Below, one piece after another: positions 8,298-62,055 of a stretch of 64,000 bases of DNA. The position numbers and the translations under genes are program-made. The stretch spans positions 9,535,190 to 9,599,189 of the forward strand of contig NC_085846.1 in assembly GCF_035594765.1 (NCBI RefSeq). The letters run 5' to 3'. Origin of the DNA: Anolis carolinensis. Its lineage: Eukaryota. The notes under the pieces are model-generated. The model had not been told where the DNA came from. It was given only the letters and a program-made list of their open reading frames with translations, and did not search any database. Numbering within the stretch: position 1 is the first letter of the stretch; each line of letters opens with the position of its first letter.

Positions 8298-10509
8298 TTT
8301 GGAACTACATTATATGGTGAGTGTAGACCCATATAATGCAGTTTAACTCAATTGAACTGCCTTATATGGTTCTACGTTAACCACATAATACAATTTCAGA
8401 CTGCATTATATGACATCCTAAGGAAGCTAGGGTTTGTAGTCTGGTGAGACACTGGAGCTGTCCAGTTGAGATTTTTAAATATCCCTCCCAAAAATGTAAT
8501 TCCAGGAATCCATACAGTGTCATCAACACATTTAAAGTACAGTAGAGTCTCACTTATCCAACACTCGCTTATCCAACGTTCTGGATTATCCAACGCATTT
8601 TTGTAGTCAATGTTTTCAATACATCGTGATATTTTGGTGCTAAACTCGTAAATACAGTAATTACTATGTAGCATTACTGTGTATTGAACTAATTTTTCTG
8701 TCAAATTTGTTGTATAACATGATGTTTTGGTGCTTAATTTGTAAAATCATAACCTAATTAGATGTTCAATAGGCTTCTCCTTAAAATCTCTCATTATCCA
8801 ACATATTCGCTTATCCAACGTTCTGCCGGCCCGTTTATGTTGGATAAGTGAGACTCTACTGTATATACAAAATCCCTTATCTGCAGGAGACACATTCTTG
8901 AATGTCGAAACTGTAAACTGGATGATAGTAATTAAATGAATGATTTATGCTATCAGTTAGCATAGAGTTGTCCTGGCCGACTTAGGATAGTTCTCTTGAA
9001 ATTTTCTATATTTTCCAGGGCAATTCTATGCTAACTTCCAATGGAAACGTATCATAGAATTGCCTGGAGGACCTAGAAATTTTATAGAGGGCACGTTGTG
9101 TTGCATGCAGGATTCCTCAGCTTCTTGATATCTGGACTGTGAATTAACCATATACAGTAGAGTCTCACTTATCCAACACTCACTTATCCAACGTTCTGGA
9201 TTATCCAACACATTTTTGTAGTCAATGTTTTCAATATATCGTGATATTTTGGAGCTAAATCCATAAATACAGTAATTACTACATAGCATTACTGCGTATT
9301 GAACTACTTTTTCTGCCAAATTTGTTGTATAACATGATGTTTTGGTGCTTAATTTGTAAAATCATAACCTAATTTGATGTTTAATAGGCTTTTCCTTAAT
9401 GCCTCCTTATTATCCAACATATTTGCTTATCCAACATTCTGCCGGCCCGTTTATGTTGGATAAGTGAGACTCTACTGTAGTTCCTCACCTCTCCCAGTGA
9501 ATCACTACAGAAGGAACTATCCTTACCATGCAGCACCGCTGTGGCATGGACTTGCTCCCCGGTGCCCAAGGCTTCACCAAAACGCAGCCGGCAGGAGGCC
9601 AGGGTGGCGTGGTCAACAGCAGAGGCAAGGTGGAGCTCGAGGCGACAAGCTGCCTCTTGCAGGTACTGCAGGAAGAAAGGCTCAGCCCGGACAACATACT
9701 GGGATGTGAAGTCATACCGGGGCCGAATGCCCCGCACTACAGGGGTGCAGTGGGTCTCAAAGTCATAGAAGGAGTATGTGCAGAAGGTGGCGGGCTCTGC
9801 GTCCCCCAGGAAACGTTGTGCCTCAGCAGAGAGCACAGCACCAGAGATGTGCAGCTCAAAGAGGTTCTCTCCACGTCGCAACTGCGGGGCCTTGTCAGGG
9901 TCTGTTCCCAAGGATGCATCGACTTCACCCATTCGGAACGGGACAGCCCTAGTTCCATAGGCGATATCCTTCAGCTGCTCTGAAGGGCAGAACAGAAAGA
10001 GGCATGCCTACAGTAGACCTTTCCAAACATTTCATGTTGGTGGCACACTTTTTAGGCTTGCATCATTTCGCGACACGGTAATTCAGTTTTATGAGCAAAC
10101 TAGAGGTGAAACTAAACCCATAAAAGAGATACAGACACAGACAGAAAGTGTAATAACAAAGTGTGTGAGAACACAACACATCTTATGAAAATCTGTCATT
10201 TGTAATTTTAAAAAACATATCATTTATTGCTTTTTTCACCTAAACTCAGAGGTTTCTCATTAGATTTGCGCGAAACACCTACACACTGCAGCTGGCACAC
10301 AAAAACGGGTCATGACACACAGTTTGGAAAGTTCTGCTCTACACTTGCCACATTCATAGTGTAACAGCATTCTTCCTTGACCAAATAAGTTGCACATACA
10401 GAGCAGCAACCAGAAATATGGGGGAAAGGGAGCAGGGAACGGAAACAAATGGAAACAGGATTATCTCCTATTCGTACTGTATTCATGCAACAGATACAGT
10501 TAATTTTAA

Positions 10510-33077: not shown

Positions 33078-34073
33078 ATGGATAATAACACCTTGCTATG
33101 CCAACCCGTGCTCTTTAATACCACCAAGTACTTTAAAATCCCCTTATACTCCATCGTGGTGGCTACTGGTCTGCCTCTGAACTGCTTGGCTCTCTATGCC
33201 TTGATCCACCAGATGAAGAAGTCGGTCATCCTCTCCGTTTACATCACGAACTTGGTCTTGGCCAATCTCTTGCAGATCCTGACCCTCCCATTCTGGATCT
33301 ACCACAGCTACCAAGACCACCATTGGGGTTTAGGGGAGGAGTTCTGCATTGTGTCTGCTTTAGCTTTTCGCACCAATTTCTATGCCAAAAACTGCTTCTT
33401 GTGCCTGATTGCCATGGAGCGATACCTGGGCCTTGTACATCCACTGATGTTCCAGAGGCTGCAGACGATTCGAGGGGCCGTCAAGATGAGTGTCGCCACT
33501 TGGTTTGTGGTGACCGTTTTGTGTGCCACCGGCATTGCGCTCCAGGTCAAGAATCCAAACCGAAGTCAGGACAATTGTCTGGATGATTCTGTACTGGACA
33601 AAGGCTATGCCCGGTTTAAGGTGAGCATCATTGGCTTCTCCTTCTTCATCCCTTGCCTTATGATGGGCTTCTTCTACTTCAAGGTCCTCCTCGAGCTCCG
33701 GAAGGTCGTCTCTTTGGAGAAGAGAGTTAAGAAGCAAATCTATGGCTTTGTCTCCCTCATCATTGCCACTTTCTTCCTTCTGTTCATGCCATACCAGTTG
33801 ATTTCGTCTTTCAGGTTCTACAGCGAACTGATGACCAAAGGTGACAATGGCCAGCTCTGCGAATTTGTGAAAGATCTTTTCATCTACATGCAGGTGACCT
33901 TGTGCCTAAGTACTTTGGACAACATCTTGGACCCGCTTCTTTATATCCTGCTCCTCAAGGATATCCGGGCAGAGCTCAAGGATACACTCAGTATCAAGGT
34001 TCACAGGACAGGACATTTGAACAAATCGGAAGAGCGAGATATATCTCTATATTTTACCAGCGAACAGATGTAA
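33078..34073 (+). CDS. Class A delta-group orphan GPCR, GPR4/GPR65/GPR68/GPR132-like, 331 aa
   Basis: Seven hydrophobic helices; GLPLN, TLPFW, C3.25, ERY..VHP, F-x-P-Y, DPLLY; N-glycosylation sequons; N-terminal/ECL3 and TM3/ECL2 Cys pairs; in-frame stop just upstream. Confidence 0.92.
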   Translation: MDNNTLLCQPVLFNTTKYFKIPLYSIVVATGLPLNCLALYALIHQMKKSVILSVYITNLVLANLLQILTLPFWIYHSYQDHHWGLGEEFCIVSALAFRTNFYAKNCFLCLIAMERYLGLVHPLMFQRLQTIRGAVKMSVATWFVVTVLCATGIALQVKNPNRSQDNCLDDSVLDKGYARFKVSIIGFSFFIPCLMMGFFYFKVLLELRKVVSLEKRVKKQIYGFVSLIIATFFLLFMPYQLISSFRFYSELMTKGDNGQLCEFVKDLFIYMQVTLCLSTLDNILDPLLYILLLKDIRAELKDTLSIKVHRTGHLNKSEERDISLYFTSEQM

Positions 34074-57277: not shown

Positions 57278-57544
57278 TATGTAATATAGTTTGAAGTAAC
57301 TTACACTCAGGTAAAGTTGTAGAAACCAGATTTGTGTTACATTCCTTGTGAGTTACACAAGAGTTTACATTGACGACTCCATACATTTCATAGGGCTTCC
57401 TAAGCAAGGAATACTCAGGTGGTTTTGCCCATTCCTTCCTCTGAGATGCACCCTAAAGCACCTGGGATTTGTCTCCCATGCAAGTGGGAGACAAGCTAAA
57501 CTGACCCTGCTTAGCTTCCAAGATGCGACAGGAGCAGGCATCTT

Positions 57545-58303
57545 TAGGACTTACAGACCAAGACTTACAAAACCCACAAAGAAAATCCAACAAATGCTAT
57601 GTTCAGCAAAGGACAAGAGGGATCCTCTCACCTCTGTAGGAGTCTACCATATATTATGCAGCTGTAGACAAGTCTACATAGGGAACACCAAACTCAGCAT
57701 TGCCCAAACAAGAATCAAGGAACATGAGAGGCACTGCAGACTAACTCAACCAGAGAAGTCAGCTGTAGCGGAGCACTTAATGAACCAACCTGGACACAGC
57801 ATGTTATTTGAGAACACAGAAATGCTTGACCACTCGAACAACCACCATGTCAGACTACACAGAGAAGCCACTGAAATCCACAAACATGTTGACAATGAAA
57901 ATAAACAAAATCTGGCTACCAGTATTTTAAAAAGACCTCTAACATCAGGCCAGTAAATAAATAACAACACTCAGAAGATTGGAGAATTCCAGACATTAAA
58001 CTATCAGAGCCAGCTAACACCACCCAACAAAGGATTCCCGCAGGCAGGAAGAAACCAGACTTTGAAGCTGCAAGGCTATTCAATGCTAATCAAGCTGGCC
58101 AAATGCACCATTCACACTTGCCTCAAGCAGACAAGAGTTCTTTCTCTCACCCTGGACATCATTCCACAGATATATGAACCTCACTGACCTAGTTTCCAAT
58201 ATACCTCACAACCTCTGAGGATGCCTGCCATAGATGGGGCAAAACCTCAGGAGAGAATATTTCTGGGACATGGCCAAACAGCCCAGAAAACTCACAGCAA
58301 CAC
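57545..58303 (+). mobile_element. Penelope-like element, GIY-YIG endonuclease end
   Basis: GVYHILCSCRQVYIGNT...RIKEH motif. Confidence 0.88.
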
Positions 58304-61369: not shown

Positions 61370-61573
61370 CCGCCAATACAATCTTCATCTAGCCAAGGAG
61401 AGTGAAATTAACCAATAGAAAACAAGGGGATAGAGATTCAACCAATAGGAGCGCAAGGTTTGAAGTACTGCGTTTTCTTGTCCTGATATCCAATAGTATG
61501 AGGGCGGAATGCTTTCCAACCAATAGGAAACGCTCTAGTGAATGCCTTCATTTGCATACGCGAGGTATAAATA
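61370..61573 (+). promoter_or_regulatory. H2B promoter: five CCAAT boxes, octamer, TATA
   Basis: CCAAT at ~61373, 61412, 61442, 61490, 61520; ATTTGCAT 61550; TATAAATA 61566. Confidence 0.88.
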
Positions 61574-61622
61574 CAGGGCGAGACGTTGTCTCTGGCACTC
61601 TGTTCTTTGGCTGTTGAAGTGA

Positions 61623-62021
<399 letters not shown>

Positions 62022-62055
62022 GGACCCCATCCATCCAAACGTTCCCTAAATGAAC

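What the first reader, a model, noticed from the sequence alone, without database searches (positions are those of the whole stretch)
33264..33932. Orphan GPCR with a rewired sodium pocket (N2.50, K3.39, D7.45, D7.49)
Seen: numbering from C90=3.25, R115=3.50, W142=4.50 and P286=7.50 gives Asn63 at 2.50 (LANLL instead of ADLL), Lys104 at 3.39 (normally Ser), Asp281 at 7.45 (normally Asn) and Asp285 at 7.49. The frame is otherwise intact. Known: D2.50/S3.39/N7.45 coordinate the allosteric Na+ in class A GPCRs; engineered S3.39K/R mimics Na+ and stabilises the inactive state; GPR4/65/68 use a buried D2.50-E4.53-D7.49 triad for proton sensing, and here 4.53 is Val and H6.52 is Gln. Inference: complementary charge changes give a built-in Lys-Asp 'ion', suggesting a Na+-independent, low-basal-activity or atypical (scavenger/biased) receptor rather than a standard proton sensor.
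Basis: partly seen in the sequence, partly recalled or inferred. Interest (0 to 1): 0.78.

Follow-up and report, generated by a model that had tools for sequence, protein, structure and literature searches.

The report
Orphan receptor with built-in lysine ion
This is an intact, selectively maintained lizard gene for an unstudied cell-surface receptor, absent from humans, in which a lysine kept in every tetrapod copy found sits where most such receptors bind a regulatory sodium ion.

Summary
Observation confirmed. window:33078-34073(+) is an intact single-exon 331-aa class A GPCR of Anolis carolinensis. Gap-free alignment of TM2, TM3 and TM7 with GPR4 gives N63=2.50, K104=3.39, D281=7.45, D285=7.49, V145=4.53 and Q240=6.52.

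The gene is real: omega is about 0.2, and orthologues lie between RPGRIP1 and HNRNPC in alligator and rhea too. It is not GPR4, GPR65, GPR68 or GPR132. It belongs to a fifth lineage of that group, probably the orphan tentatively named 'GPR201' in 2019 and never studied.

Its tetrapod branch (salamander, platypus, possum, turtles, crocodilians, ratites, squamates) forms a 100/100 clade. K3.39 is invariant there (49/49) and absent from the 146 next-nearest protein clusters, which mostly carry S.
- **7.45:** N became G on the same stem.
- **2.50:** D/E fell to 18%, against 97% in relatives.
- **Counter-charge:** every complete sequence keeps at least one acid at 2.50, 7.45 or 7.49.

So only K3.39 defines the family. 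N2.50 and D7.45 are lineage-specific, and D7.49 is ancestral.

The most likely mechanism is a tethered Lys-Asp pair replacing Na+, as seen in the GPR151 structure (2026) and in engineered S3.39R receptors. This is inferred, not measured. The G-protein microswitches are intact, so nothing points to a decoy. I class it as a new variant of a known kind. Another first-stage note of this scan covers the same stretch.

The parts
33078..34073 (+). Single-exon ORF (331 aa plus TAA) of the orphan class A GPCR
   Evidence: Pfam 7tm_1 1.1e-38. AF2 model shows seven TM helices plus helix 8, pLDDT 80.2. dN/dS about 0.2.
33264..33266 (+). N63 = 2.50 (AAT); normally Asp
   Evidence: Variable in the clade: N 29, H 9, D 8, S 2, E 1.
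33273..33275 (+). Q66 = 2.53, invariant polar residue of the clade (49/49)
33387..33392 (+). K104 = 3.39 (AAA) and N105 = 3.40 (AAC). K is invariant in 49/49 and replaces the Na+-ligand Ser. N replaces the Ile of the P-I-F core in 45/49.
33417..33425 (+). E114-R115-Y116 (ERY; 3.49-3.51), an intact G-protein microswitch
33510..33512 (+). V145 = 4.53. The 'apEx' acid of the GPR4/65/68 triad is absent.
33795..33797 (+). Q240 = 6.52 (His in GPR4/65/68)
33918..33920 (+). D281 = 7.45 (GAC). Lineage-specific: the clade majority is Gly and the relatives have Asn.
33930..33944 (+). D285-P-L-L-Y289 (7.49-7.53). D7.49 is present in 42/46 and is the most constant candidate counter-charge for K104.
9396..9932 (-). 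Synteny anchor: RPGRIP1 exon (first C2 domain)
   Evidence: Pfam PF11618 2.6e-47. The same neighbour is present in alligator L006 and rhea L010.
48069..48326 (+). Synteny anchor: RRM exon of the HNRNPC-type gene
   Evidence: Pfam RRM_1 5.6e-14. It is 98% identical to the downstream RRM gene in L006 and L010.

Best explanation
The ORF encodes a functional orphan class A (delta-branch) GPCR. It is the Anolis orthologue of a fifth lineage of the GPR4/GPR65/GPR68/GPR132 group that has no human counterpart. In the fish and shark members the ion pocket is canonical (D2.50, S3.39, N7.45, D7.49). On the stem of the tetrapod members it was rebuilt once: S3.39 became Lys and N7.45 became Gly, which I infer makes room for the long side chain. 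After that, D2.50 was no longer needed as an ion ligand and drifted (N, H, S, D, E), but every sequence keeps at least one acid at 2.50, 7.45 or 7.49. I infer that the Lys ammonium group sits where Na+ normally sits. It would be salt-bridged to D285 (7.49) and, in Anolis, also to the derived D281 (7.45). That would give a covalently tethered, Na+-independent clamp on TM2-TM3-TM7 that favours the inactive state, and activation would have to break or re-partner this ion pair. The G-protein microswitches (ERY, Y5.58, DPxxY, P34.50, helix 8) are intact, so it most likely still signals through G proteins. Conserved basic residues at the pocket mouth (K/R5.39, K/R6.58, R3.33) hint at an anionic ligand. 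Shown here: gene integrity, selection, phylogeny, synteny and residue states. Inferred: the geometry of the Lys-Asp pair and its effect on signalling. The confidence of 0.6 is for the whole statement including the inferred ion pair. The shown parts alone (a real, selected gene of a fifth lineage with invariant K3.39) I put at about 0.9.
For: Intact ORF and 7tm_1 match. Best solved relatives are GPR4, GPR132, GPR68 and GPR65, and the AF2 model matches GPR4/GPR68 structures with TM-score 0.8-0.9. Purifying selection: NG86 omega is 0.20 against A. sagrei (dS 0.20) and 0.26 against Sceloporus (dS 0.57); ML GY+F3X4 omega is 0.18-0.19. Careful tree (bootstrap/SH-aLRT): the fifth lineage has 98/89 support and is separate from GPR132+GPR4/65/68 (97/95). 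The K clade has 100/100 support and a species-tree-like order: salamander, then mammals, then sauropsids. Tiliqua has this gene plus separate GPR4 and GPR132 genes. The order RPGRIP1 / GPCR / HNRNPC is conserved in alligator and rhea. K3.39 is 49/49 in the clade against 0/145 in the other nearest clusters. D/E at 2.50 is 9/49 against 139/143. N7.45 is 1/46 against 92/122. By parsimony S->K happened once. All 46 complete sequences keep at least one acid at 2.50/7.45/7.49, and each loss of D7.49 (gecko paralogue SKDN, Salvator NKDA, salamander EKGN) comes with an acid elsewhere. The states were re-read directly from genomic DNA of 9 species. Precedents: in the GPR151 cryo-EM structure K3.39 contacts D2.50 at 3.0 A and overlaps the Na+ site (PMC13167728), and engineered S3.39R lies in the Na+ site of inactive alpha1A-AR, EP4 and D2 (PMC10282093).
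Against: No coordinates of the AF2 model were available, so K104-D281 and K104-D285 distances were not measured. The ion pair rests on analogy with GPR151 and engineered receptors, where the partner is D2.50, which Anolis lacks. The 'at least one acid' rule is not statistically established: there are only 3-5 independent losses of D7.49, and the sign test gives p 0.25-0.5. There are no functional data for any member. Engineered S3.39K/R receptors are largely locked inactive, so how a natural K3.39 receptor activates is unexplained. Identity with 'GPR201' rests on matching taxon pattern and tree position, not on matched accession numbers.
Confidence: 0.6

Rival explanations
1. Tethered-cation proton sensor. 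The buried K3.39-Asp pair, rather than a Na+ held by D2.50/D7.49, is the pH-titratable lock. Protonation of D7.49 or D7.45 at acid pH releases the Lys and lets TM7 move, so the receptor senses protons without Na+ and without the E4.53 triad.
For: The receptor sits in the GPR4/65/68/132 supergroup. In those receptors, protonation of the buried D2.50/D7.49 pair is thought to release Na+ (PMC11724869). GPR151 is the only other natural K3.39 receptor I found, and it is described as proton-sensitive (PMC8744809 abstract). Colubrid snakes acquired an acid (D) at 4.53, the triad's third position. H81 in ECL1 is conserved in 46/48.
Against: The triad is absent in Anolis (N2.50, V4.53). There are only three extracellular His, against 9-10 in GPR4 and GPR68. 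H6.52 and H1.28 are absent (Q240, F13). GPR132 lacks the triad and is a poor pH sensor, and adding E4.53 did not convert it (PMC7948426). There is no assay.
Confidence: 0.2
2. Atypical, scavenger or arrestin-biased receptor. The Lys lock keeps the G-protein site closed, and the receptor acts as a ligand sink or signals only through arrestin.
For: Engineered S3.39K/R receptors favour the inactive state. GPR151, with K3.39, is described as activation-resistant. The C-terminal tail has Ser/Thr sites.
Against: R3.50 is present in 48/48, E3.49 in 46/48, Y7.53 in 46/46, P34.50 in 45/47 and Y5.58 in 36/46 (present in Anolis), and helix 8 is predicted. By my own knowledge, known decoy chemokine receptors have a degenerate DRYLAIV motif. 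GPR151's resistance was attributed also to its VCF motif and N-terminal plug, which are absent here.
Confidence: 0.1
3. K3.39 has a role unrelated to the Na+ site, for example contacting a deeply bound anionic ligand or simply packing TM3 against TM2/TM7. The variation at 2.50 and 7.45 would then reflect general relaxation of an unimportant pocket.
For: Conserved basic residues at 5.39, 6.58 and 3.33 suggest an anionic ligand. 2.50 and 7.45 change often, at least 6 and at least 13 times.
Against: 3.39 faces the TM2/TM7 core in all solved class A receptors (established knowledge). Absolute invariance of K together with A3.38, Q2.53 and near-invariant N3.40 and D7.49 indicates a constrained polar core, not a relaxed one.
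Confidence: 0.08
4. Decaying copy or assembly artefact.
For: None found. The older protein model P0001 differs after residue 307.
Against: The ORF is intact in Anolis and in 45 other full or near-full sequences. Omega is about 0.2 with unsaturated dS. The same residues occur in an independent A. carolinensis record and in A. sagrei. The stretch is held in runs from seven studies. The A. sagrei C-terminus supports the unspliced ORF.
Confidence: 0.02

Closest known systems
GPR4 / GPR68 / GPR65 (proton-sensing GPCRs) and GPR132 (G2A)
   Same: Closest solved relatives by sequence (E 5e-35 to 5e-27, about 28-30% identity) and by fold (TM-score 0.8-0.9). They share the DPxxY motif (D7.49), N3.35, the C3.25-ECL2 disulfide and the N-terminus-TM7 cysteine pair. 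All fall in one supergroup with 100/98 support.
   Different: This gene is on a separate, fifth lineage (98/89), outside the GPR132+GPR4/65/68 clade (97/95). It has K3.39 instead of S, N2.50 instead of D/E, V4.53 instead of E (GPR132 also has V), Q6.52 instead of H, N3.40 instead of I, and few extracellular His. It lies at RPGRIP1-HNRNPC, not at the GPR4/65/68/132 loci.
'GPR201', tentative name for a new orphan in the vertebrate GPCR cartography (Sci Rep 2019, PMC6504862)
   Same: That orphan is described as branching with GPR4, GPR68, GPR65 and GPR132, without a human orthologue. One subtype is found in gar (7 duplicates), fishes, one reptile and two marsupials. This matches my tree and the tandem gar copies.
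   Different: The paper gives a name and taxon list only. It reports no residues, no sodium pocket, no function and no synteny. I could not match accession numbers, so identity is probable, not shown.
GPR151 (natural K3.39 receptor; cryo-EM, PNAS 2026, PMC13167728)
   Same: It has a natural Lys at 3.39. In the structure the Lys contacts an acid of the Na+ pocket (D2.50, 3.0 A) and overlaps the Na+ site. It is also an orphan.
   Different: It is an unrelated branch of class A. I did not compare the sequences here: it appeared in neither the top 60 solved chains nor the top 150 clusters. GPR151 keeps D2.50 and has VCF instead of DRY plus an N-terminal plug. The lizard receptor has N2.50, keeps ERY, and would have to pair K3.39 with D7.49/D7.45. 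This would be a convergent second case.
Engineered S3.39R/K thermostabilised receptors (alpha1A-AR, EP4, D2, M2 and others)
   Same: A basic side chain at 3.39 placed in the Na+ site mimics the ion and stabilises the inactive state (PMC10282093).
   Different: Those are laboratory mutants in a pocket otherwise unchanged (D2.50, N7.45, N7.49). Here the surrounding pocket co-evolved (G/D7.45, variable 2.50, N3.40, Q2.53) since before the amphibian-amniote split.

Membership tests
Class A (rhodopsin-like) GPCR, Pfam 7tm_1 | Significant match to the 7tm_1 profile above the gathering score | tested here: met
   133.7 bits against a cut-off of 30.5, residues 35-289
Class A (rhodopsin-like) GPCR, Pfam 7tm_1 | Seven TM helices plus helix 8, with reference residues N1.50, R3.50, W4.50, P5.50, P6.50, P7.50/Y7.53 and the C3.25-ECL2 cysteine pair | tested here: met
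   AF2 helices 17-46, 51-78, 87-120, 131-157, 175-209, 215-252, 257-292 and 294-319. N35, R115, W142, P192, P238, P286, Y289, C90 and C167 are present.
Proton-sensing GPCRs sensu stricto (GPR4, GPR65, GPR68) | Buried acidic triad D2.50 - E4.53 - D7.49 (PMC7948426) | tested here: not met
   N63, V145, D285: only one of the three
Proton-sensing GPCRs sensu stricto (GPR4, GPR65, GPR68) | Placement inside the GPR4/65/68 clade | tested here: not met
   It falls in a separate lineage (98/89). The GPR4/65/68 representatives form their own clade with 100/99 support.
Proton-sensing GPCRs sensu stricto (GPR4, GPR65, GPR68) | The two His conserved in all three receptors, H1.28 and H6.52 | tested here: not met
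   F13 at 1.28 (counted from N35=1.50) and Q240 at 6.52
Proton-sensing GPCRs sensu stricto (GPR4, GPR65, GPR68) | Activation by extracellular acidification | not testable with these tools
   Needs a cell assay
GPR132 (G2A) | Placement in the GPR132 clade; E2.50 and S3.39 | tested here: not met
   The GPR132 clade (Xenopus P0061, Tiliqua P0068) is separate at 100/97. Tiliqua has both genes. The query has N2.50 and K3.39.
Fifth lineage of the group ('GPR201' of PMC6504862) | Branches with GPR4/65/68/132; no human orthologue; found in gar, fishes, reptile and marsupials | tested here: inconclusive
   Tree position and taxon pattern agree and gar has tandem copies. The paper's Ensembl identifiers could not be matched. 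Absence from human rests on the paper and on general knowledge, not on a search here.
Natural tethered-cation Na+-site receptors (GPR151 type) | Lys at 3.39 | tested here: met
   K104, by gap-free TM3 alignment; 49/49 in the clade
Natural tethered-cation Na+-site receptors (GPR151 type) | Lys side chain occupies the Na+ site and contacts a pocket acid | not testable with these tools
At least one acid at 2.50/7.45/7.49 in 46/46 sequences is indirect support.
Natural tethered-cation Na+-site receptors (GPR151 type) | Partner acid is D2.50 | tested here: not met
   Anolis has N63. The candidate partners are D285 and D281. Turtles and crocodilians do keep D2.50.
Atypical / decoy receptors | Degenerate DRY and missing G-protein microswitches | tested here: not met
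   E114-R115-Y116, Y200 (5.58), Y289 (7.53) and P122 (34.50) are present and conserved

The most novel reading that the evidence does not exclude
The tetrapod members of this orphan lineage are Na+-independent proton (or anion) sensors. In them a buried, covalently tethered Lys3.39-Asp7.49/7.45/2.50 ion pair replaced the mobile Na+ as the titratable lock. This would be a second, independently evolved solution to GPCR pH sensing, convergent with GPR151 and derived from the same ancestor as GPR4/65/68. The free variation at 2.50 (D, E, N, H, S) and 7.45 (G, D, S, N) would then tune the pKa and set-point in different reptile lineages.
Probability: 0.2. Interest if true: 0.8.

Novelty: new variant of a known kind. 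Interest (0 to 1): 0.55.

Why it matters
D2.50 and the Na+ pocket are among the most conserved features of class A GPCRs. How Na+ controls activation is mostly studied with point mutants. This clade is a natural experiment dating from before the amphibian-amniote split. The ion was replaced by a tethered Lys, the neighbouring Asn gave way to Gly, and the otherwise near-universal D2.50 then became dispensable. The receptor has nevertheless stayed under purifying selection with intact G-protein switches. Comparing the natural states (DKGD turtle, NKGD skink, NKDD anole, HKDD snake, SKDN gecko, and DSND fish as the 'before' state) could show what D2.50 does beyond binding Na+, and how a receptor activates when its 'ion' cannot leave. 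It also adds an uncharacterised fifth member to the proton-sensor/G2A group. That member is missing from humans, mice and the usual pharmacology panels, which matters for anyone reconstructing how GPCR proton sensing evolved.

Tried and rejected
- **Run kinds:** all runs are listed as guesses ('RNA?'). Small runs holding 30-45% of the words are suggestive of RNA or capture libraries only.
- **Papers:** Katritch 2014 (PMC4106411) is not held. A search for 'GPR201' in the cartography paper's supplement found nothing. The first free-text literature search was noise.
- **Compensation test:** the independent-pairs test of whether loss of D7.49 is compensated by another acid is underpowered (p 0.25-0.5).
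- **Synteny by tblastn:** the 10-kb flanks of the lizard, snake, turtle, possum, platypus and gar loci did not reach RPGRIP1 or HNRNPC exons, so synteny is shown only for alligator and rhea.
- **ESM Atlas:** it returned only generic GPCR clusters.
- **Other window ORFs:** Pfam found nothing in 41616-42161, 45272-45757, 57348-57956 or 61548-62030.
- **Rejected readings:** 'it is GPR4' (the database name 'GPR4-like'), because true GPR4 is a separate gene in the same species; 'it is GPR132', for the same reason; and pseudogene (omega about 0.2).
- **Spliced models:** The turtle and rhea annotated models are spliced, and I used only their single long ORFs by reference.
Full report
**1. What is in the sequence**

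window:33078-34073(+) is an uninterrupted 331-codon ORF. It has an ATG, a TAA stop, and an in-frame stop 18 nt upstream of the ATG. It matches Pfam 7tm_1 at 133.7 bits.

Its best solved relatives by sequence are GPR4 (5e-35), GPR132 (5e-32), GPR68 (1e-29) and GPR65 (5e-27). An AlphaFold2 model built on 46 homologues has mean pLDDT 80.2 and pTM 0.77, with seven TM helices plus helix 8. Its nearest solved folds are GPR4 and GPR68 complexes, with TM-score 0.8-0.9.

The genome is Anolis carolinensis. A UniRef record of that species is 306/307 identical over residues 1-307.

**2.

The HMMER alignment with GPR4 has no gap in TM2, TM3 or TM7. Counting from R115 (3.50), P286 (7.50), N35 (1.50), W142 (4.50) and P238 (6.50) gives:

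| Residue | Position | Codon coordinates |
|---|---|---|
| N63 | 2.50 | 33264-33266 |
| K104 | 3.39 | 33387-33389 |
| N105 | 3.40 | 33390-33392 |
| E114 | 3.49 | 33417-33419 |
| V145 | 4.53 | 33510-33512 |
| Q240 | 6.52 | 33795-33797 |
| D281 | 7.45 | 33918-33920 |
| D285 | 7.49 | 33930-33932 |

The codons were read directly. The finding's coordinates span exactly N63 to D285.

The residues are not private to this assembly. The independent A. carolinensis record and A. sagrei have the same four, and 20 public runs from seven studies hold the stretch or part of it.

**3. It is a live gene**

- Pairwise NG86 dN/dS is 0.20 against A. sagrei (dN 0.041, dS 0.203) and 0.26 against Sceloporus (dS 0.57).
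- A codon model (GY+F3X4) gives omega 0.18 over eight tetrapods and 0.19 over five squamates.
- The word search found 46 proteins, including the Anolis record itself. The others come from squamates, turtles, crocodilians, kiwi and rhea.
- In alligator and rhea the gene lies, as in the window, between RPGRIP1 (minus strand; Pfam C2-C2_1 and RPGR1_C) and an RRM gene of HNRNPC type. Rhea also shows SUPT16H beyond RPGRIP1. Another first-stage note of this scan on the same stretch (s1-621367) describes the same arrangement.

**4. Which receptor it is**

Databases call it 'GPR4-like', 'OGR1-like' or 'probable GPR132'. It is none of these.

A profile search of 1.84 billion representatives, followed by naming of representatives and a careful ML tree, gives the picture below. 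Support values are ultrafast bootstrap / SH-aLRT.

| Group | Support |
|---|---|
| Supergroup containing all of these receptors | 100/98 |
| GPR132 + cyclostome genes + GPR4/65/68 | 97/95 |
| Fifth lineage | 98/89 |
| Tetrapod clade within the fifth lineage | 100/100 |
| Sauropsids within the tetrapod clade | 100/95 |

The fifth lineage holds shark, ray-finned-fish and frog 'GPR4-like' genes plus the tetrapod clade. The tetrapod clade is made of Pleurodeles (basal), possum plus platypus, and sauropsids. This order mirrors the species tree, as expected for orthologues.

The skink Tiliqua has this gene (P0007) together with separate GPR4 (P0211) and GPR132 (P0068) genes.

A 2019 survey of vertebrate GPCRs (PMC6504862) noted a new orphan branching with GPR4/65/68/132. 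It tentatively named it GPR201, with one subtype in 'gar (7 duplicates)/fishes/reptile(1)/marsupials(2)' and no human orthologue. The position, the taxa and the tandem gar copies fit, so this is probably that clade. I could not match identifiers, and in the held literature the name appears as a receptor name in no other paper.

**5. The pocket, family-wide**

I aligned all hits to the family profile and read the key columns.

| Position | Tetrapod clade | 146 next-nearest clusters |
|---|---|---|
| 3.39 | K 49/49 | K 0/145 (S 122, G 12, A 4, T 4, N 2) |
| 2.50 | D/E 9/49 (N 29, H 9, D 8, S 2, E 1) | D/E 139/143 |
| 7.45 | N 1/46 (G 25, D 15) | N 92/122 (G 1, D 0) |
| 3.40 | N 45/49 | N 0 |
| 2.53 | Q 49/49 | Q 10 |
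| 7.49 | D 42/46 | D 79, N 40 |

The fish members of the same lineage have the canonical D-S-N-D pocket. By parsimony S->K happened once, on the same stem as N->G at 7.45. Position 2.50 then changed at least 6 times and 7.45 at least 13 times.

The state strings below are read in the order 2.50, 3.39, 7.45, 7.49.
- Turtles and crocodilians are D-K-G-D.
- Most lizards, platypus and possum are N-K-G-D.
- Anolis is N-K-D-D and Sceloporus is D-K-D-D.
- Snakes are H-K-D-D.
- A gecko paralogue is S-K-D-N, Salvator is N-K-D-A and the salamander is E-K-G-N.

All 46 complete sequences keep at least one acid among 2.50, 7.45 and 7.49. Whenever D7.49 is lost another acid is present, but with only 3-5 independent events this is not significant (p 0.25-0.5). 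The states were re-read from genomic DNA of nine species.

**6.

The specific quartet, however, is not one co-adapted unit.
- K3.39 is the invariant.
- D7.49 is inherited from the ancestor of the whole group.
- N2.50 is one of several tolerated states.
- D7.45 is a late addition in pleurodont iguanians. Snakes and a few others also have it.

**7. Mechanism: shown and inferred**

Known from papers:
- D2.50, S3.39, N7.45 and N/D7.49 form the Na+ site.
- In receptors with D7.49 the ion is bound by both acids, which is thought to favour low basal activity (PMC11724869).
- S3.39R is used to mimic Na+ and was seen in the Na+ site of inactive alpha1A-AR (PMC10282093).
- In the GPR151 cryo-EM structure a natural K3.39 contacts D2.50 at 3.0 A and overlaps the Na+ site (PMC13167728).

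Inferred here: K104 occupies the Na+ position and pairs with D285 and D281. Gly or Asp at 7.45 accommodates or stabilises it. With the ion covalently supplied, D2.50 lost its constraint.

Consequences, also inferred: no Na+ allostery, a stabilised ground state, and an activation step that must break or re-partner the ion pair.

R3.50, E3.49, Y5.58 (Y200), Y7.53, P34.50 and helix 8 are intact. A G-protein-coupled receptor is therefore more likely than a decoy.

Conserved K/R5.39 (46/46), K/R6.58 (42/46) and R3.33 (31/49) suggest an anionic ligand.

The receptor is not a standard proton sensor. The triad is broken, H6.52 and H1.28 are absent, and there are only three extracellular His, of which H81 alone is conserved.

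A non-standard, tethered-cation proton sensor remains possible. GPR151 is described as proton-sensitive (PMC8744809 abstract), and colubrid snakes gained D4.53.

**8. Limits**

- No expression or functional data exist for any member.
- Absence from eutherians and neognath birds is based on PMC6504862, on general knowledge of the human repertoire, and on what my two searches returned. It is not based on a dedicated search.

**9. Verdict**

This is a real, conserved orphan receptor of a little-known fifth lineage of the GPR4/65/68/132 group. Its defining trait is a natural Lys at 3.39 in a co-evolved, Na+-free pocket. That makes it a new variant of a known kind and a convergent second case after GPR151. 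It is of moderate to good interest as a natural experiment on the class A sodium site.

Noticed in passing
L004:10001-11050 (Pantherophis); proteins P0025, P0029, P0031, P0038: Colubrid snake orthologues carry Asp at 4.53, the position of the third acid (E4.53) of the GPR4/65/68 proton-sensing triad. They also have H2.50, K3.39, D7.45 and D7.49. Viperid and elapid copies have V or L there.
   Followed up: partly
Proteins P0019, P0022, P0024, P0026, P0032: Squamates have a second paralogue clade of this gene (two copies each in Eublepharis, Elgaria and Euleptes). The gecko copies have S2.50, D7.45 and N7.49. I did not check whether Anolis has a second copy elsewhere.
   Followed up: partly
window:33996-34073 and residue 134 (33477-33479): The older Anolis protein record P0001 (332 aa) diverges from the window ORF after residue 307 and has I instead of V at 134. 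The A. sagrei end (...ISLYFTSEQM) matches the unspliced window ORF, so the older model probably carries a spurious 3' splice.
   Followed up: partly
L009:10001-10984(+) and L009:18134-19333(-) (spotted gar): Two tandem fish members of the same lineage lie 7 kb apart. Both have the canonical D2.50, S3.39, N7.45, D7.49 pocket, H6.52 and E3.49. This fits the 'gar (7 duplicates)' described for GPR201.
   Followed up: partly
L008:15533-21182(-) (platypus): Another annotated 7tm_1 gene (370 aa, running off the locus) lies 4 kb downstream of the platypus K3.39 gene on the opposite strand. It did not match the family profile as a single long ORF, and its identity was not determined.
   Followed up: no
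window:32600-34600: Four small runs of one study (116-177 million letters) hold 30-45% of the sampled words of this 2-kb stretch. That is far more than shotgun DNA of that size should give for a lizard-sized genome, so they are probably RNA-seq or capture libraries.
   Followed up: no
I left them out of every later search.
   Followed up: no
window:19719-20240(-): A coiled-coil ORF matches the 5' part of the RPGRIP1-type gene in the alligator locus (54% over 104 aa) and weakly in rhea. RPGRIP1 therefore seems to start about 13 kb upstream of the GPCR, head-to-head with it.
   Followed up: partly
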